A DNA stretch of 60,802 nt, counting the filler, from Trichosphaerium sp. ATCC 40318 (taxonomy: Eukaryota; Protista; Tubulinea): NCBI GenBank assembly GCA_038496445.1. It is 4 parts of 4 records of this genome, joined end to end, with 100 filler letters (N's around TTAATTAATTAA, not from the genome) between each part and the next. Parts side by side here need not be neighbours in the genome. Positions count along the whole stretch, not along the records: positions 27,454 to 47,965 come from JALMLS010000272.1; 3 more parts are not named here. One strand, given 5' to 3'. Position 1 is the first letter of the stretch; each line of letters starts with the position of its first letter. Of this stretch, positions 4,064 through 47,965 are shown in pieces. A program made the position numbers and the translations under genes. Under the pieces are notes generated by a model. The model had not been told where the DNA came from. It was given only the letters and a program-made list of their open reading frames with translations, and did not search any database.

Positions 4064-4610
4064 GTGATCGCCATTAAATCTATTCAACACGTGCCACCAG
4101 AGACGCTTACACAGATACTGAGTCACTTGGACAAGTGGGAGCGAATAAGCACAACAAGAGTTTGTCATTTATTTAATAACATCATTCGCAATAACCTTGG
4201 CTTTGACAAACTATTATTGTATGTACCAACAGATTGTCATGTTCTGAAAGGCAATCCATTACTTAAAAACACTCGCATTATTTGTAAACCCGAAGCTCTA
4301 TCAGAAGCGGACTATTCTTGTCTTTCTGGTGTTAACTCAATAGATGTCTCATATTCAAAAATAACAGATGTAGGCGTTCTTGCTTTGCTTGATGGAGGAA
4401 TACATACTATCAAATACATTGTTGGCAATCTAGAAAAGTTGACATAATTGACGGGAAATCAATTTCAGATGAAGGAAAAGCATTAATACACGTCAATGAT
4501 CTATGCTTGAAGCGGTGTAACATGATAAAAGGCTCAGTATTGAAGCACCTGAGTGCTCTAAGGCGCTCTACAATCTTTACTAATATTACAAGTGCGCCTA
4601 CCTTGAAATA
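4064..4610 (+). pseudogene. F-box/LRR protein, apparently degraded
   Basis: F-box-like IQHVPPETLTQILSHLDKWERISTTRVCHLFNNII, then LRR_CC-like SIDVSYSKITDVGVLAL. No in-frame ATG, and the LRR text (ISDEGKAL...CNMIKGSVLKHL) continues in another frame after the stop. Confidence 0.5.
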
Positions 4611-4964
4611 GGCAGCTGCCTTCTTATGGTATAAGTCACCACCGCTGTACCATATCTCCATGCGCTGAATAGTCGCCAGTCTTAGTAATTGGTCTAAAAC
4701 TTGTCTAAACCTGCTCTCCACACCCAGGCGACTATGTTAACTGGTCCATAGCGCTCCTATTTTCGTACACAATCTTAAACAAATTTGAGCAGCATCCGCA
4801 GCGTTTTTTTCGTGTTCACAGAAACCATATTTTATTTTCGGACAATGTTACACGTCCAACACACTTTCCATATTGGGTACCCATGTACAAAGGGCTCCAA
4901 CGAGTATGTAAATATACAATTACACTTAAAACAATACATAAATACACCCATCTTCGGCATCATC

Positions 4965-27453: not shown

Positions 27454-29953
27454 TTTCTATCGCTAACGAAGTGCTTTGAACAGAGCTGAAGGTCCAGTTT
27501 CGTTTATAAATAGGAACGGTTTATCTGCTTTCAGTGGTGATATAAATATTTCAGACGGTGTGACCGTTGATATGTCAGTGGTATGTGCGCATACTCTATA
27601 TTAATAGACACTTGTAAAAAATCTTCCCTTACATTTTTTTTTCCGTGCCCAGAATTCTAGCGTGGACAGCACTGTTACTGGCGGTTTCATTGGATTTTAT
27701 GGTGTTTTAAGATTCACGGGGATGTCTTCTATTACTGATGTAACAATAAGCGATAGCGTTAATCTTGATACTTCAGTGGAAAATGTACTATCGTTCGATG
27801 GAAAAATGGATAATGCTAATATAATCTGGAGAAGTTCTCAGCCTCTTCGTGTCGGTGCGTGAAACAGAAATTCTCATCAAAATAGCCTTCAAACAAACAA
27901 GCGCCACATTTAACAACTTACTTTATTATTATGCACGCACGTGCTAGTTTATAACTTTTTTTTGGTTCTCATATTTTTCTTTTTTTTAGAGCAAGTGAGC
28001 AGAGAGGTGAATGTCACTTTGAATACTGTTGCTTCTGCTGGTGACCTTATTCTTGCCAAAATATCAGCTGAGATTGCAGATCTTGCTATAAATAGAGTTC
28101 TGCGACTAATAGAAGGGTACATAAATCCCTGTGCTTGTTTATTAACCTACCATTTCTTAGAGCAAGGGTTGAAGCGACTATACTCCCAATGCAGTTTATG
28201 CTATCAACGTCCATTGAAGAATCTCAGCTCATACTATACACAGAAAATGAAGCAGGAGTGGTATTAAACGTAGACGCAGGAGCAGGGAGCACACTGACAA
28301 TTAGAAAAGGACTATTCAATTTAACAAGCGTAGTGGTATTACTTTGGGTTTAAATTTTTTTCAAACCATTTTGACCTATTTTTAGGACTTGACTGATTCG
28401 CAATCCCCTTTGAACATAATTGTTAATACGGCTGGTGTACTCTTTAAGAAAACAAACACTGTGGCATCAGTGACATCTATATCTCTTATATCTGGAGGAG
28501 CGCTAGGATTCCAGATCCTTTCGCTTGATGATATACAAACAAGCGGAACATTTTCTTCTGAGTTTGTCAGCAATATTTTCGGAGGCGAGTCGAGAATCAT
28601 TGTAGAATTCAGCGAATCTATAACTGCACCAAGTGAGCCAGTGGAAATATTGCTCATAGAGTAAGTATAACATCCAAACATACGCTATTTTTTTTGTCAA
28701 CGACAGTGTAATTGCTAATCTTATTTTTTTCTTGATTAGAACAATGGGGTTTTTTGATGAGTTGCCTACACTCGAAACGTCATACACTGGAAGTGATACA
28801 AGACTTAAAACAGATTTGAACGGGATCGTACTAGTCATAGAACCAGCAGTACCGTCATCACCAACCGACGCTCCAACAACAGCAGAACCAACAGCATCAC
28901 CAACATTAGAGCCAACAACCACACCACAACCAACATTATCGCCAACGCTTTCGCCTACTGTAGCTCCAACCAACGCTCCAACAGCACCTCCAACAGCACC
29001 TCCAACAGCGCCTCCAACAGCGCCTCCAACTAACGCGCCTACAAACGCGCCAACGGCTCCTCCTACAATCGCTCCAACGAATGCACCTGTACCTCCGCCA
29101 ACAGATGCTCCAACGAATGCTCCTGTGGCTTCTCCAACAGCACCGCCAACAAACGCACCGTTCACAGATGCTCCAACTAATGCTCCTGTTGCTCCTCCAA
29201 CATTAGTACCAACGAGTAATCCATCGCTATCACCTACCACTGCCCCTGTTTCAACACCTACAGCACCACCTACAAACCCACCTACAGATATGCCAACAGC
29301 AGCTCCAACAGACGCTCCTACTCAAACTGACGCACCAACAGATGCTCCAACGAATGCTCCTGTGGCTCCACCAACAGATGCCCCTACAAACGCTCCAGTT
29401 ACAGATGCGCCTACTAATGCTCCTGTGGCTCCACCAACAGCTGCTCCATCGAACCCACCTACAGATGCCCCTACGACAGAACCGCCAACGGATGTGCCAA
29501 CAGATGCCCCTACGACGGAACCACCAACGGATGCGCCAACAACTGCACCTACAACTCAAGAGCCTTCGGTGGAACCAACACCACAACCTACTAGTAGTGC
29601 TCCAGTTAGTGTTATGCAACCAACATTTGAACCAACACCTGCACCTACAACAAGAGCACCAAGGGCTCCATTAGGATCCCAACTAGTTTTTTGTCTCCAG
29701 GCTCTTCTCCGTCCAACTCAAGATGGTTGTTTGTACGTACTTTTTTTTTCTTACTGTTTGACACTAACAACATCGAATTAATAGGTGCACTTCAGTAGCT
29801 TGTGAGAATGTGGGAGGTGGTTTCTTGTGTCCAAAACCAAATGGCCAAGATTGTACTAGGACCTATCCGACCACAAGTGAGTTAAAAACTGTAACACTGA
29901 CAAAGAATTATGCGTTCGGACGTGGAACATGTACATGTGAGTTTTTAGTTTAG
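27454..29953 (+). CDS. 5'-truncated extracellular protein: beta-rich N-terminal region, long PT(D/N)AP stalk and Cys-rich C-terminal domain
   Basis: Spliced exons 27454-28660, PT-repeat ORF 28732-29781, last exon CTSVACENVGGGFLCPKPNGQDC...CTCEFLV*. Confidence 0.65.
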
Positions 29954-40850: not shown

Positions 40851-41470
40851 ATGTCTGTATACAAGATACTAGTTATTGGCAGTATTGGTGTTGGTAAATC
40901 AGCTCTTACAATACAATTAATAAGCGGCAACTTTGTTGATGACTATGACCCTACCCTAGAAGATTCGTAAGCGTTTTAATCAATTAACAACACTTTTAAC
41001 GTACTTTTACGCTTTTCTTGTCTCCTTGGTTCAAACGCGTTATAACGCTTATTTAGGTATCGTAAACGATGCATTGTAGAGGATGAGACTCTTGTATTGG
41101 ATATTCTTGATACAGCCAGAGATGACTTCTCTATATTACGGAACACTTGATAAGTTGACAATCCAATTTTCCCATTATTTTATCAAATAGGTTTGTTGAT
41201 TCATTTTAGGATGAAGGATCTAGATTATGTTCCTTCAGTAATAGTTGGGAATAAAGTAGATTTAGAAGAAGAGAGACAAGTTACTAAAGAAGAAGGAGAA
41301 GAGCTGGGAAAGCAGTATTACTCCATACCTTTTATTGAGACATCAGCTAAAACACGTGAAAATGTTGAAGAAGCTTTTTATCAACTTGTATAAGAGATAA
41401 GGAAGCACCGAGATCCAGTTACATCTAAACCTATTAAACAAATGAGACGTTGCACTATGGTGATGAATAG
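40851..41470 (+). pseudogene. Ras paralog B, pseudogene
   Basis: GSIGVGKS and DTARDD. Exon 3 is deleted relative to the paralogs, and there is a premature TAA at 41391-41393 where the paralogs have CGA. Confidence 0.85.
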
Positions 41471-41700: not shown

Positions 41701-42465
41701 ATGACTGAATATAAGATAGTTGTTATTGGCGATGGTGGTGTTGGTAAATCAGCACTTACAATACAACTTGTTCAAAACCACTTTGTTGATGAATACGACC
41801 CTACCATAGAAGATTCGTAAGCATTTTTAATCAATTAAAAACACTTTTACACAGTTTACTTGACTCTTTGTTCAACGCGTTATAACGCTTATGTAGGTAT
41901 CGCAAACGATGTATTGTAGATGAAGAGACGCTTCTCTTGGATATTCTTGATACAGCAGGAAGAGAAGAGTACAATGTAATGCGTGATCAAGTAAGCACTT
42001 TGTCAGCTACCATGTGTAACTAACTTATTTGTTAACGTACAGTACATGAGAACAGGTGAAGGATTTTTACTTGTTTATGCTATTACAAGCCGCACATCTT
42101 TTGAGGAACTACCAGCTTTCTATGACCAAGTTAGAAGGTACGGAACACTTGGCAAGTTGACAATCCAATTTTCACATTATTTTATCAAAAATGGTTTGTT
42201 GATTCATTTTAGGGTCAAGGATCTAGATACTGTCCCTTCAGTAATAGTTGGGAATAAAGTTGATTTAGAAGAAGACAGACAAGTTACTAAAGAAGAAGGA
42301 GAAGAGCTTGGAAAGCATTACAGCATTCCTTTTTTTGAGACATCAGCTAAAACACGTGAAAATGTTGAAGAAGCTTTTTATCAACTTGTACGAGAGATAA
42401 GGAAGCAACGAGATTCAGGTTTACCAAAACCTTTTAAACGAAAGAGACGTTGCGCTATGATGTAA
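41701..42465 (+). CDS. Ras-family GTPase paralog C (4 exons), natural Q61R
   Basis: [76 protein letters not shown]. Confidence 0.93.
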
Positions 42466-43104
42466 GAAAAACCTAGAGGGTTAAATAGTTCTTCAGGAAG
42501 GTGGACAAAGAGCCACCATTTTTCAAAGCAATATCCAAATGTACAATAAACAAATACTTGTATTTCGGTCTCGTAGTTAATAGGTGCATTTCGTCATGGA
42601 CTTGTATTTGTGACACTTTCTTTTAAATATACAGAAACTTGTGGATGTACGTAGTAGCCTATAATCTGTGTATAAGCGCCCTCACAATCTCCTTGAAAAC
42701 AGCAAAATATTAGGATCGTAAGAACAAGTACCCTACTTAGTATGAAAGATACTGTTTTGTCAGATATTGCCTATAGCCAGTGGAAAACAAGCTTCATTAA
42801 TAGCGTATGGCTTGTGGTTTCTGAGGCTAAATCTTTACACGCCGCATATCTCATTAGGCAGAGAAAACAAGTTGTCACTTCTGTGATTGGACTATTAACA
42901 CGTGCGCTCATTTTACCTTTGGTCAAACGTTTTTGGGTCTAGAGCTTCCGGCTTATTCCATAGTCACGCGCTCTTGACAATAAGACCAATCTTGTCAACG
43001 TACAAGTCCTACTTGAAAAATGCATGCGTCTAAAGAGTAAAAACAAACGAACAGGTGAAAACTTTTTTTAAACTCTTCATATTTATTCTTTTTTTTTTCC
43101 TTTT

Positions 43105-46100
43105 TTACTGGTTACTTTTCGCTTTTAATTGTGCTAATGCTCTCTTAAATTCTCCAACAACACGCTTTAGCTTCGGTTTCATAGTATCAGATGCTTCTGA
43201 AATCCAACGTTCGCATTGACGAAGAATATCATCACCATCAATGAGGAAATGATTTTGGATGACTTCCTCGAATCCTAAAACAAAAAAAAAATGTTAAAGA
43301 ACGCCATTGAATGTGACGTTTCTCTTCTTTTCTTTCGTACCTTCTGGAGGGTTTTTAATACTATCTACCATTGCCCATCGTATTGTATCATATTGGAGTT
43401 GTTCGTTATACTCCTTTGAACGTAAAGAACCTTCTTTTGTGTTTCTCTGTGCTTCATATGAAGGTTCATTAAAGTAAGGCTCTTCGATTAGTATAAGCCC
43501 TTGGATACTCACAAGCACCTGTGATGAAATCGTTAAAACAAGAATCACTAAGAATATAATAAAAGAAGTTGATTACAGGCGCGTATTACAAAGACAGAGA
43601 CAAAAATAAGAGGGAAGTATTTCGAGATAAAAAAATATTTTAAAAGGGATCGTACTTGGTACAGTGTTGATGATACAGAGTTCCATTTAGATGATTTGTC
43701 ACCATGCCATGTACCCAATAATGACAAGCATACTTTACCATCACTATATAGATTTGGATTATAACGAACTGTCCCATTACCAGTGGTCTAAGTTTAGTTA
43801 GTTTGTAGCTCTTTTTGGACAAAACAAAAAAAAAGTTTGACAACAAGGAAGTACGTACAGTTATATTTACAAGGGGTGGGTCGTTAGGATATGTTGGTGG
43901 AAAGAATATATCGAATAGAAAACATCCACATCCATAAGGTGTCCCTTTTGGTCCTGTGATGATCGCCTGTTTGAAAAAAAAAAAGTAAGAAAAAAATCAG
44001 AATTGTTTTTAAAGAAAGTTGGCATACCTTCATAACATCAATTCTCTCGTCGTCCGTTCTTACGAATACAGAAGAACCTCTGTTTATAGGTAAACTACCA
44101 GCAAGCATCTTACATTCCTAAAAGATGATAGTGAGTACACAACAACCAGAAAAAAAAAAATAGAAAAAAAGAAGAAACACGGAATTCTTTTGAAAACCAA
44201 AGTTGAAGACTTGCACGTGTTGTGCTGAAAAAAATATATTATGGATTTCAAGTCGCTAATTTTGTGAACATATTTTAAGTACCTTTGTCAAACGTTCTAT
44301 TTTTTGTTTATTGAACGAATTTTCGGACGATTTAATATTTTTAGCAAATCTATGCCTGTATTCTCCATTATCATCAAACATCTCAACAGAATCGAATACA
44401 AGATCTTGCAAGGTCTCCACATAAGCTTCATCAACCTCTATAAAACAATAAAAATCAGCACAAAGAATAACAGAAAAAGAAAACACGTGGAGCAAGCAAA
44501 AAAAAACCACTAATTGTTTGCCCTCTGTGAGGAGCGTACCGCGGTCTTTTTCTGCCTGGACCTCAGGACTTAATTCTACAAGCATAGGATCCTCAACTTC
44601 ATCAATTTGAGGTACTAAGGCGATAATTAGGAACAACCATCAACAGCAAAATAAATTTGAGTACGTTTGGCTTGTTCTGCTTCAAAGACAGCTAATACAT
44701 CAAAAACGAATTTTCTAAAGTTTCCAATGGCTTCTTTCGTTAGCAGGGAGTGTTTGTTTACAACATATAATGCTAAAAGATCAAAGTCAGTCTTAAAAAA
44801 AAACCAAGTAACTTAAACAATAACTTGGTTAAGTCAGATTTAGATCATAATCAACAATAATGAGCCTACCTTTGTTCATGTACTCATGAGCGTAATCCAT
44901 ATCTTCTGCAAACATATGAACAAATATTTTCTCATGAGCAAAACCCATTGTAATCGCTATGATGCGCTTCAAAAGATCCTACAAAGAAGCCATAGTTTAG
45001 TAAAAGTGACTTAAGATATTACGGTACTTACCTGTGGCTTAAAGTTATATTTTTGAGGGTTATCAACATTAAGATCGTTGAATTTAGGCCCTACTATCTG
45101 CTCATAGAAGCGGGTGAGCATAGAGACTGTTTTGAACGCAGTAAGTTTGTTTGACATAAACTTTGACGCTAGAGTCCTTGTGCTCGATAAATGCTGTAGT
45201 AACTCTAAAATAGCAATTGCAAGTGACATGAATCCCTAGTAGAAAAATTAAGAAACCAAGTAAGCTGTTGCTATCTACGCGAAAAAAAGAATACCTTGAC
45301 AGTCCTTTCTTGTACACCAAAGTACCCCTCACGGCGCTTTTTACTATAAAAATATGAGTTTCGAGTTTAAGCAATAGAAGGCTGTACGTTTCAGCAGGTT
45401 GAGCATTCCACGTAGCAACGTCTTTCATAGCCATTTGAAGCTGTTTAATATCTACTAATCGTCCCAACGCATCATTGAGTAGCATGATAGCATCGTTCAA
45501 TATTGTAGAAAGGAACTGTTGAGCTTCTTCTGACTTGTCATTTAACAGTAACTAATGTTAAAACAACATTAATGGCGGACTTTGTTCCAAATACTCGTGC
45601 ATACCTGAGTTATAATCTTTTTATACATTGGTACGCCCCATAGATCAGTAATGAGCATTGCTATGTTCCTTCTAACAGCGTATTTATCATACTTTTCTTT
45701 ATCAACGTCCAGGCCCTGTTTTTTAGTTAAGTCAATTCTTATACTGTTAAGTTGTATGTGCTTTTTTTTTCAAATTATACCTCTACTACATCTAGGTTGA
45801 TGAATGTATTCATAAGTCCAGGCACAAGATCTTTTTGACATCTTTTGTTGCTTATGAAGAAATTTTTGTACAGAGACTGGAAAGCAGACGTAGGACCCAA
45901 AGATGCTGTTTTGGAAAAAAAAAAGTTAAATATATAAATATCATTTTTATAATCGTTCTAATCTTACGTTGTGTGGAGTTGAATGAAAAAGAGTTTTGTT
46001 GGTACTTTGGACCTGGTGTCTTTCTTTTACTTTGGTATTGTAACTCAGCAAGTAAGGTAGCAAATTTAGCCCTAAGAGTAGTCATAAACTATAAAAAAAA

Positions 46101-47965
46101 GGAACCCAAAAAGTGTATTTTTTTCTTTTCCAGTTTGTTCTTGAACATACCTAACGATAGGGCTCTTTACAATATGTGTTGCATTCATAAATATAACAAT
46201 AAAATCAATAACAAGTCCAAGTCTTAGAGTATTCAGTATAGCCGGTTTTTGACGTGCTACAAACGCAACATATTGCTTGGAATAATTTAGCGTAAACTTG
46301 CTTCGATCGGATTTTGTAAACACGTACAAGTGGTACACGAATAAAGTACTCTGGGAATGCAGAAAATACTGCTTCAGCTTGTCCCTTAGGTTGGTATTCC
46401 TCGTAAGTTTTTACTAAGAAATGCATAGCAGTATAGCAGAAGCTAAAATGTAAGTTAGTTGACCATAGTGGCATAGAAAAAATGAAGGTACTTCAAGCAA
46501 CTGTTAACCAACTCGGGTGCAAGTGCGTGAGTATCCCATGCATCTACTAAAGCAAATAGCTTAGTTAATGCTTTATCAAGAGCCTTTCCATCTTTTGTTT
46601 GATGCCAGTCAGCTCCTTTAAATGTAGTGTAAGATTAAGCAATCGGGATGGAAAAAAAGTTACTAACCATAAAGTTTTTGAAGATTTGCAGCTTTTTGTT
46701 TCGTATTCAATAACGCTGTTAGATGCTTAGAATGACGCTCAACAATAGGCATTATTCTACGATAATATTATTACAAACTATAAGCCGTATAAAGAAAATA
46801 AAGAACTAGAAGGTACCCAACGAATATCATGTGAAACGTCGTAAAGAAAATATCTGTAATAAAGTTGAATGTTCCCATTTTTATCTTTGTATCCACAGCA
46901 ACATCAGGGTATGTTGATGTAAGTAATGTTGTTTGTTTAGTGTAATCTATCAATTGATTATACTAAAGGGGAAGAAATTGTTAGAGCTCAGCACATACAA
47001 AAAAATAACGATTTTTTTTTCTCACTCTGGCGTAGTGTGGATTGATTAATCGGATCTTGTCAGTTGATGGGTACAGAAAGGGCTTGCAAAATAGAAGCAT
47101 GATAGCAGTAAGATTTACTGAAAATGCATCTGATGACGCCATGAGAGATAACTACAGGTTTTTTTAAGAAGACAACACATGCAACAAGTTTTTTTTTCTC
47201 GAAAAAATAATAAACATACCTCGTAGTATAATGGATCATTTGCTGCTAATGTAGTGCGCATTTCATTAAGTTGTGCTGTTTTAGCGAACCACATGAGTAG
47301 TATTTTTCTTGCTTGTACATTAGGAGACTTAAATACGCATAGCTTCTTTAAAATAAAGTGCATCTCTCGCTATGAAAAAAAAAATAAGAACATTAAAAAT
47401 AAATCTTAAAGCTTTTGTGTCATTTACTGCATGCCTGTAAATACTTTTCTGTATTTATCTGATGTTGATGAAGAGCAGCAGTACCGCACTAGGGTAATCC
47501 TGATTTGATCACTATTAAAGTGATTGGTAGGCTATTCATTGAGGACAGTTGCAAGAAAGGTCCAATTATTGAATCATTTTCATTGAACGTGCAGTAGCTT
47601 GTTGTGTTTTCTCAAGCTCCAAACTGAATACTCTTATTAGCATTTTATACGCTCGAAAAAAAAAACAAACATAAAAACACGTGTAAATACACGTGCTACA
47701 TGAGTTTTTGTCTTTTTTTTTTTGAAGATGAATGTAGCGCTCTTACTCACCCTAGCATGCATGCAAATAGCTCCAGTAACGGTGGATAGTTCATAAGCGC
47801 TTTAAGTTTCTTGAAAAGCTCGAAATATCCGCTAAAAAAAACAAAAACCAAAATTAGCAAGTTATAGATAACAGTCAATGGTACGCACTTGAGAATACAT
47901 CACCTTGTTTTCACAACATGTTTCATTGCAACGACGACTTGTGAAACAAGTGGAGAGAAAACTAC
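43105..47965 (-). CDS. Ufd2/UBE4 (E4) core domain fused to a BIRC6/BRUCE-type ubiquitin-conjugating (UBC) domain; 5' end off the contig
   Basis: Ufd2 core motifs [45 protein letters not shown] and [24 protein letters not shown]. These splice in frame via GT-AG introns to [52 protein letters not shown] and EEPYFNEP. Confidence 0.85.

What the first reader, a model, noticed from the sequence alone, without database searches (positions are those of the whole stretch)
43105..47965. Ufd2/UBE4 E4 scaffold whose U-box is replaced by a BIRC6-type E2 catalytic domain
Seen: the Ufd2 core runs to its normal end (...[13 protein letters not shown]...[18 protein letters not shown]). Where the U-box should begin there is only a remnant ([11 protein letters not shown], cf. 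DEFxDPLMxxLM). Canonical GT-AG introns then keep the frame into [15 protein letters not shown]...[15 protein letters not shown] and a full UBC domain with its active-site Cys ([11 protein letters not shown]). No stop or separate start lies between them. Established: Ufd2 uses its U-box to recruit an E2 for chain elongation on Cdc48/Rad23-linked substrates, and BIRC6/UBE2O-type UBCs work as E3-independent E2/E3 hybrids. Inference: a self-contained E2-E4 chimeric ligase, an architecture I do not recognise as characterised.
Basis: partly seen in the sequence, partly recalled or inferred. Interest (0 to 1): 0.85.

Follow-up and report, generated by a model that had tools for sequence, protein, structure and literature searches.

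The report
Ufd2 core fused to BIRC6-type E2
A real, transcribed gene of an amoeba joins the scaffold of the ubiquitin chain-extending enzyme Ufd2 directly to a BIRC6-like ubiquitin-conjugating (E2) domain in place of the usual U-box; it is not a one-off, but belongs to an old, widespread protein family that sits in databases as "uncharacterized".

Summary
On the minus strand, 43105-47965, a multi-exon gene encodes a complete Ufd2 core followed in frame by a complete BIRC6-type E2 cassette: pre-UBC motif, UBC with catalytic Cys, and C-terminal helices. There is no U-box. Spliced RNA contigs from three studies, plus a 100% identical transcriptome peptide (Trichosphaerium sp., MMETSP0405), link the last core exons to the E2 exons without a gap. 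This rules out two separate genes or a misassembly.

The architecture is not unique. I collected 32 database proteins with Ufd2P_core + UQ_con and no U-box. They come from amoebae, amphioxus, a brachiopod, molluscs, an annelid, green algae and a euglenozoan. The ESM Atlas also holds a 64-member cluster with this architecture. The window protein aligns with them collinearly over about 890 residues (30-41% identity). Their UBC domains form one group (support 93/93), apart from true BIRC6 of the same animals.

It lies in the most variable linker segment, which is predicted to be disordered.

I found no paper that describes the family. A self-contained E2-E4 function is a reasonable inference but is untested. 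The gene's N-terminus is cut by the piece edge, and 47370-47640 is unresolved.

The parts
43105..47965 (-). Whole gene as far as the piece allows: coding sequence from the piece edge (N-terminus cut off) to the stop codon TAA at 43105-43107. RNA contigs reach 43073, so the 3' UTR runs at least that far.
44665..47369 (-). Ufd2 core, resolved part: 15 exons (47369-47220, 47151-47026, 46962-46817, 46756-46668, 46615-46492, 46442-46328, 46275-46151, 46071-45968, 45905-45781, 45715-45605, 45551-45388, 45343-45295, 45235-45032, 44978-44870, 44772-44665). It ends '...AVFEAEQAK'.
   Evidence: RNA joints; model; Pfam Ufd2P_core on exons and on P0001; collinear alignment with 32 homologues; yeast Ufd2 244-873
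47370..47965 (-). Upstream part of the core, only partly resolved. Weak but collinear matches to the family at 47962-47909, 47818-47753, 47646-47581 (one frame) and 47584-47534 (another frame). There is an apparent frame break near 47581-47590. 47370-47535 could not be joined. No RNA contig covers this stretch.
   Evidence: depth table
44540..44614 (-). It is spliced on both sides in RNA. It corresponds to the variable, predicted-disordered linker of the family.
   Evidence: Joints 44614/44665 (X3, X4) and 44437/44540 (X2, X3, X4)
44283..44437 (-). Pre-UBC exon with the conserved motif (..Y..L.D..FD..EM....HRF..NI), homologous to the segment directly before the UBC domain of BIRC6, plus the start of the UBC N-terminal helix.
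   Evidence: cassette profile against BIRC6 4524-4798, E 1.5e-108
43341..44117 (-). UBC domain, four exons: 44117-44028, 43966-43859, 43787-43656, 43518-43341.
   Evidence: Pfam UQ_con; BIRC6 best PDB hit; RNA contig X4 record 13 spans all four
43728..43730 (-). Codon of the catalytic Cys ([11 protein letters not shown]). The NPN motif (HPN equivalent) and a five-residue loop equal in length to the BIRC6 'insertion loop' lie just upstream in the same exon.
   Evidence: Cys 31/31 and both Asn 31/31 in the family; loop by counting on the alignment against PMC13623948
43108..43274 (-). Last coding exon: post-UBC helices of BIRC6 type ('FEEVIQNHF...QCERWI...').
   Evidence: helices 922-1000 in the AF2 model of P0022

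Best explanation
SHOWN: the window carries an expressed, intron-rich gene, most likely from the amoebozoan Trichosphaerium. Its product is a complete Ufd2/E4 helical core joined to the complete C-terminal catalytic cassette of the BIRC6 type: pre-UBC motif, UBC domain with catalytic Cys and NPN motif, and post-UBC helices. In the modelled relative P0022 only about 24 residues between the modules are disordered. The cassette occupies the position of the U-box, which is absent. The gene belongs to a conserved family with the same collinear architecture in Amoebozoa, Metazoa, Chlorophyta and Euglenozoa. The family's UBC domains group together, apart from true BIRC6, so one old fusion event is the simplest history. 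INFERRED: in canonical Ufd2 the U-box only recruits and activates a charged E2 next to the core, which holds the ubiquitylated substrate or ubiquitin chain. Here the E2 is built in. The protein would be charged directly by an E1 on its own Cys, and would pass ubiquitin to ubiquitin or substrate held by the core, without a separate E2 or a RING/U-box. That would make it an E2-E4 hybrid comparable to the E2/E3 hybrids BIRC6 and UBE2O. The linkage type, substrates, Cdc48/Rad23 binding and the cognate E1 are unknown.
For: One transcript: X4 contig 13 (972 nt) runs from 43085 through all the E2 exons, the linker exon, and 44 nt into core exon 44665-44772. X3 contig 9 covers 44371-44763 across both junctions. 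X2 also shows joint 44437/44540. Peptide P0001 (MMETSP0405, 100% identical) links core exons 45551 to 44729 and overlaps X3 contig 9. Domains. Family: 32 of 32 proteins have Ufd2P_core + UQ_con and none has a U-box. The window model aligns in a single HSP of about 890 residues at 30-41% identity. An ESM Atlas cluster of 64 members is 100% PF10408 + PF00179. Taxa. The UBC tree puts the fusion proteins on one side of a branch, with SH-aLRT 95 and 93/93 with the C20 mixture model, and in 90% of bootstrap trees. Catalytic residues are invariant. AF2 model of P0022: pLDDT 83.7, pTM 0.83, with only about 707-730 disordered. Folds match Ufd2 and BIRC6 UBC. BIRC6 and UBE2O as E3-independent E2s: abstract of PMC12818219.
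Against: There is no functional data of any kind. Support for a single UBC clade fell to 52 in one quick tree after three long branches were removed. No phylogeny of the core against canonical Ufd2 could be made, because only one canonical sequence (P0134) was retrieved. A U-box also activates E2~Ub allosterically, and nothing here shows what replaces that role. The N-terminal part in the window is cut by the piece edge and shows a frame problem, so the full-length product of this particular copy is not established. Logan contigs are assemblies, and some unspliced contigs also exist.
Confidence: 0.6

Rival explanations
1. The architecture is real but the function differs. The built-in E2 is not E3-independent and does not elongate chains. 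In this reading the Ufd2 core only delivers an ordinary E2 to Cdc48- or Rad23-bound clients where another E3 acts, or it serves as a substrate adaptor for (multi-)monoubiquitylation as in UBE2O.
For: No RING/U-box-like activating element was found by Pfam in any of the 32 members. UBE2O, the second-closest solved relative, multi-monoubiquitinates its clients (abstract of PMC12818219).
Against: The cassette is closest to BIRC6 over its whole length, including the extensions (E 1.5e-108 against 1e-56 for UBE2O). It replaces exactly the module whose job in Ufd2 is to bring in an E2. None of this is decisive.
Confidence: 0.3
2. This copy is a decaying or N-terminally truncated gene. The 5' exons no longer join in frame, and only a product starting at or after the Met at 47363 (about 916 aa, lacking the N-terminal region of the family) could be made, if any.
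For: Collinear matches to the family change frame near 47581-47590. 47370-47535 could not be joined. No RNA contig covers 47482-47647.
Against: The downstream 918 codons are intact across 21 introns, conserved, and transcribed and spliced in three studies. A single-base error in an A-run of the assembly would explain the clearest break. RNA coverage is thin everywhere.
Confidence: 0.12
3. Two neighbouring genes (a Ufd2-like gene without a U-box and a BIRC6-like E2) are joined only by read-through transcription, by gene-model error, or by a misassembly around 44550-44770.
For: None found.
Against: Spliced junctions 44614/44665 and 44437/44540 are seen in two and three independent studies. P0001 bridges 44870/44772. 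The same collinear fusion occurs in 32 proteins from distant taxa, including complete Trinity ORFs and RefSeq models.
Confidence: 0.02

Closest known systems
Ufd2 (yeast) / UBE4A, UBE4B (animals): E4 chain-elongation ligases
   Same: Complete Ufd2P_core. The family profile matches yeast Ufd2 244-873 (E 2e-81). The AF2 model superposes on 3M62/2QIZ/9KHS over about 770 columns.
   Different: There is no U-box. A covalently attached E2 cassette stands in its place. Sequence identity to yeast Ufd2 is only about 19%, and to the canonical P0134 about 24-27%.
BIRC6 (BRUCE/Apollon), giant E2/E3 hybrid
   Same: The last 275 or so residues are homologous end to end (human BIRC6 4524-4798, E 1.5e-108). 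This covers the pre-UBC motif, the five-residue loop before the NPN motif, the catalytic Cys and the post-UBC helices. TM-score is 0.80-0.84 at 42-44% identity.
   Different: There is no BIR domain or giant BIRC6 scaffold; the N-terminal part is a Ufd2 core. The fusion's UBCs form a group separate from the true BIRC6 of the same animals (Branchiostoma, Lingula, Owenia, Liolophura).
UBE2O, E3-independent E2
   Same: A large protein with a C-terminal UBC of the same superfamily (E 1e-56). The concept of substrate binding and catalysis in one chain is shared.
   Different: UBE2O's N-terminal domains (PF23043/44/46, as in the plant hits) are absent. The UBC is clearly closer to BIRC6.
Database-only Ufd2P_core + UQ_con proteins, e.g. 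Branchiostoma LOC109473492 (P0097), Lingula LOC106153808 (P0111), Scenedesmus 'ubiquitin elongating factor core-domain-containing protein' (P0132), Cavostelium (P0013), Pyxidicula (P0022)
   Same: Same collinear architecture, same conserved motifs and same UBC clade. The window gene is an orthologue or member.
   Different: 30-41% identity. Animal members carry 500-700 extra N-terminal residues without a Pfam domain. The window copy lacks its N-terminus (piece edge).

Membership tests
Canonical Ufd2/UBE4 E4 ligases | Complete Ufd2P_core helical domain | tested here: met
   Exons and P0001 cover profile positions 436-615. Homologues that align collinearly with the window model cover profile 1-628. 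Yeast Ufd2 244-873 matches at E 2e-81. The window's own N-terminal part is cut by the piece edge.
Canonical Ufd2/UBE4 E4 ligases | C-terminal U-box (PF04564) that recruits an E2 | tested here: not met
   No U-box match on the linker exon at E<=10, nor in 8 members at E<=0.1, nor in 32 members at E<=0.01. The canonical control P0134 scores 3e-17. The linker is disordered in AF2.
BIRC6-type UBC cassette | UBC fold with catalytic Cys and NPN motif, plus BIRC6-specific pre- and post-UBC extensions | tested here: met
BIRC6 proper | BIR domain and giant N-terminal scaffold | tested here: not met
   Pfam finds only Ufd2P_core, UQ_con and an overlapping UEV match in the family. The UBC clade is separate from BIRC6.
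E3-independent E2/E3 hybrid enzymes (functional class) | Ubiquitylates substrates with E1 only | not testable with these tools
   Needs biochemistry.
Ufd2 core-UBC fusion family (database-only) | Collinear homology across the core, the linker position and the UBC cassette; UBC falls in the fusion clade | tested here: met
   A single HSP of about 890 aa with about 25 members, E down to 0. The window sits inside the fusion group, and its smallest supported set is 5 fusion rows at 100/96.
UBE2O | UBE2O N-terminal conserved domains (PF23043, PF23044, PF23046) | tested here: not met
   Absent from all 32 members. Present in the plant UBE2O-like hits.

The most novel reading that the evidence does not exclude
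The family is a third, ancient class of self-sufficient ubiquitin enzymes beside BIRC6 and UBE2O: an 'E2-E4' that needs only an E1 to extend or branch ubiquitin chains on substrates held by its Ufd2 core. On this reading it predates the split of amoebae and animals from green algae and euglenozoans, and was later lost in vertebrates, the fungi studied so far and land plants.
Probability: 0.35. Interest if true: 0.75.

Novelty: new variant of a known kind. Interest (0 to 1): 0.55.

Why it matters
Ufd2 is the founding E4, and its only known catalytic device is a U-box that borrows an E2. A current paper states that BIRC6 and UBE2O are the only two E2s that work without an E3 (PMC12818219). A conserved family in which the E2-recruiting U-box is replaced by the E2 itself is a natural "Rosetta-stone" fusion. 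It confirms the Ufd2-E2 functional link from an evolutionary angle. It also offers a compact (about 1000-1600 aa), possibly self-contained chain-extending enzyme for biochemistry and structural work, in tractable organisms such as amphioxus, molluscs and green algae. It raises testable questions: which E1 charges it (it keeps the BIRC6 loop that gates UBA6 versus UBA1 in humans), what replaces U-box activation of E2~Ub, and which linkages it builds. The value lies in the family, not in this locus: the window adds one more member and good splice evidence.

Tried and rejected
(1) Pfam and PDB searches with the two short terminal core exons, the linker exon and the pre-UBC exon on their own gave nothing usable, because the exons are too short. 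This was solved through P0001 and family profiles.

(2) The exhaustive representative search with the 68-aa core exon returned only 7 hits. That was enough to find P0001 and P0005 but not enough for a survey.

(3) A core-only profile search meant to collect canonical Ufd2 was swamped by the candidate cap and gave a single canonical protein, P0134. So no core phylogeny and no profile-profile test of the U-box remnant could be done.

(4) U-box remnant: pairwise BLASTP suggested it, but L-INS-i alignment of 27 junctions plus P0134 did not reproduce it. I rejected it as a demonstrable feature.

(5) For the one intron that RNA contigs did not show, three in-frame solutions existed. P0001 selects 44773-44869.

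(6) I tried to join the exons at 47370-47640 by GT..AG enumeration, tblastn and a family HMM. This is unresolved.

(8) Eight literature searches found no description of the fusion. The single paper that holds both Pfam names (PMC6548493) treats them as separate proteins. Subscription journals are not covered.

(9) The spliced protein of the window could not be passed to the search or fold tools, because there is no reference for a spliced product. Homologues P0005 and P0022 served as proxies.
Full report
**Observation.** The feature lies on the minus strand. Laying Logan contigs of four runs from three studies on 43000-47965 gave 18 spliced joints, all GT..AG on the minus strand. Contig 13 of run X4 (972 nt) runs from the 3' UTR (43085) through every E2 exon, the pre-UBC exon 44283-44437 and the linker exon 44540-44614, and 44 nt into exon 44665-44772. 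Contig 9 of X3 covers 44371-44763 over the same two junctions, and X2 also shows joint 44437/44540. One junction was not seen in these contigs, and three in-frame solutions existed for it. The peptide P0001 settles it: P0001 is 100% identical, comes from transcriptome MMETSP0405 (taxid 498012, Trichosphaerium sp. ATCC 40318), and reads "...EYMNK|[15 protein letters not shown]", so the intron is 44773-44869. P0001 overlaps X3 contig 9 by about 35 nt. The chain of evidence from core exon 45551 to the 3' UTR is therefore continuous. Two more introns (45716-45780, 46616-46667) follow from contig ends and reading frame. The resulting model is open for 918 codons, from 47369 to the stop at 43105-43107.

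**Domains.**
- Exon 45390-45551 matches Ufd2P_core profile positions 436-481, exon 45032-45235 matches 501-564, and P0001 matches 470-615 of 628.
- A profile of the family's core matches yeast Ufd2 residues 244-873 of 961 (E 2e-81). That is right up to the U-box.
- The UBC exons match UQ_con.
- A profile of the whole C-terminal cassette aligns end to end with human BIRC6 4524-4798 (E 1.5e-108). The match includes the segment before the UBC ("LEekYV..LqFDtFEM..HY") and the helices after it. UBE2O scores 1e-56 and UBE2Z 9e-45.
- The catalytic Cys (codon 43728-43730) and both Asn residues of the NPN motif are invariant in 31 of 31 relatives.
- Counting residues on the alignment, the five-residue BIRC6 "insertion loop" (4649-4653, PMC13623948) has an equal-length counterpart here.

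**The architecture is a family, not a curiosity.** The representative search found P0005 (941 aa): Ufd2P_core positions 17-628 of 628 plus UQ_con, with no U-box. Searches from P0005 gave 32 proteins with PF10408 + PF00179, and Pfam confirmed 32 of 32 for both domains and none for the U-box.

Named sources:
- Chordata: Branchiostoma
- Brachiopoda: Lingula
- Mollusca: Nucella, Babylonia, Littorina, Liolophura, Patella
- Annelida: Owenia
- Chlorophyta: Scenedesmus, Haematococcus
- Amoebozoa: Cavostelium, Pyxidicula, and a member from the MMETSP0437 transcriptome (its organism field is cut off at "Sexangular" and I took it for an amoeba)
- Euglenozoa: Entosiphon

The ESM Atlas holds a 64-member cluster with both domains in 100% of members, with Porifera the commonest phylum. 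The window model aligns with about 25 of the 32 in a single HSP of about 890 residues that crosses the junction, at 30-41% identity.

In a tree of 123 BIRC6/UBE2O-type UBC domains, the fusion proteins form one side of a branch (SH-aLRT 95). That figure fell to 52 in a quick tree after three long branches were removed. With the careful C20 mixture analysis of 86 rows it was 93/93, and 90% of bootstrap trees showed a single change. True BIRC6 proteins of Branchiostoma, Lingula, Owenia and Liolophura fall outside this group. The fusion is therefore a separate paralogue in those animals, and one old fusion is the simplest history.

**Linker and "remnant".** Between the core end and the UBC N-terminal helix lie 58-105 residues. 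The first part is variable and the second part is the conserved pre-UBC motif.
- BLASTP against the one canonical Ufd2 in hand (P0134: core 43-666, U-box 708-757) puts it on "EIPDEFL".
- The multiple alignment does not reproduce that placement.
- No U-box signal exists in any member.
- In the AF2 model of the complete member P0022 (pLDDT 83.7, pTM 0.83), only residues about 707-730 are disordered, and that is exactly this stretch. A confident helix and strand of the pre-UBC motif follow from residue 731.
- Foldseek confirms Ufd2 for the core and BIRC6 UBC for the cassette.

At best the remnant is a vestige. It cannot be shown.

**Mechanism (inferred).** In Ufd2 the U-box brings a charged E2 to the end of the core, which holds the ubiquitylated client. 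Ufd2p adds K48 links onto K29-linked chains (PMC5303827, abstract), and structures of Ufd2/Ubc4~Ub with K29-linked ubiquitin exist (9KHS/9KHT). Replacing the recruiter by the E2 itself predicts an enzyme charged directly by E1 that transfers ubiquitin to whatever the core holds, as in the E2/E3 hybrids BIRC6 and UBE2O (PMC12818219). That the whole BIRC6 cassette with its extensions is retained and conserved suggests those extensions are needed for U-box-free activity. The E1 partner is open. The BIRC6 loop that excludes UBA1 in humans is kept, yet the PDB holds a Drosophila UBA1-BIRC6 complex (9QGG). None of this mechanism is tested here.

**Limits.**
- The N-terminus lies beyond the piece edge.
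- Upstream of 47369 the family's signal is weak but collinear, changes frame near 47581-47590, and is unresolved at 47370-47535. No RNA covers that stretch. The cause could be an assembly error in an A-run or decay of the 5' end.
- The window's own spliced protein could not be given to the fold or search tools, so homologues served as proxies.
- Whether Trichosphaerium also has a canonical UFD2 could not be checked.
- Eight full-text searches found no description of the fusion. Subscription literature is not covered.

**Verdict.** I rate it a new variant of known kinds (Ufd2 E4 x BIRC6-type E2 hybrid), interest 0.55.

Noticed in passing
window 47370-47640 (minus strand): Matches to the family's N-terminal segment change reading frame near 47581-47590 ('..ATARSMK' in one frame, '[13 protein letters not shown]' in another, with the same spacing as 'TAREIEN....GFL' in relatives). 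47370-47535 cannot be joined in frame. This is either a one-base error in an A-run of the assembly or decay of the 5' end.
   Followed up: partly
window 44438-44539 (minus strand): This 102-nt intron between the linker exon and the pre-UBC exon has no stop codon and is a multiple of three. The whole stretch 44259-44639 is one open frame, so intron retention would still give an in-frame product with 34 extra residues.
   Followed up: no
window 44118-44282 (intron) and 43972-43999: A/T-rich low-complexity sequence here attracts hundreds of unrelated contigs (word depth 640-690 in X1, against 2-10 elsewhere), with loose ends that run into other sequence. It is a mapping artefact, not expression.
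   Followed up: no
window 45293-45877: X3 and X4 also hold unspliced contigs across introns (45293-45554, 45539-45814, 45626-45877), with several base differences and small indels. These could be pre-mRNA, DNA carry-over or a diverged strain.
   Followed up: no
window 41193-41393 and 42046-42465 (+ strand): Two nearly identical Ras/Rap-like small GTPase gene fragments in tandem ('[22 protein letters not shown]...[16 protein letters not shown]'; the second ends in a CAMM prenylation box). They are convergent with the fusion gene's 3' end.
   Followed up: no
window 28732-29781 (+ strand): A 349-aa ORF made almost wholly of Pro/Thr/Ala repeats ('APTNAPTAPPT...'), mucin-like, in the most GC-rich part of the piece (0.48 against about 0.35).
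   Followed up: no
ESM Atlas result, (rank 2): A cluster of 53 UQ_con (+RWD) proteins, 78% of them from Nucleocytoviricota, was the second-nearest by features (score 0.82, below the trust level). Giant viruses may carry BIRC6-like large E2s. This is a lead only.
   Followed up: no
P0134 (canonical Ufd2 from a JGI metagenome), residues about 690-710: Its U-box start reads 'EIPDEFLGMLSPSNGLWNPLANLPRSDPLMYTLM', which looks like a retained short intron in the gene call between 'PDEFL' and 'DPLM'. That weakens it as a reference for the remnant test.
   Followed up: no
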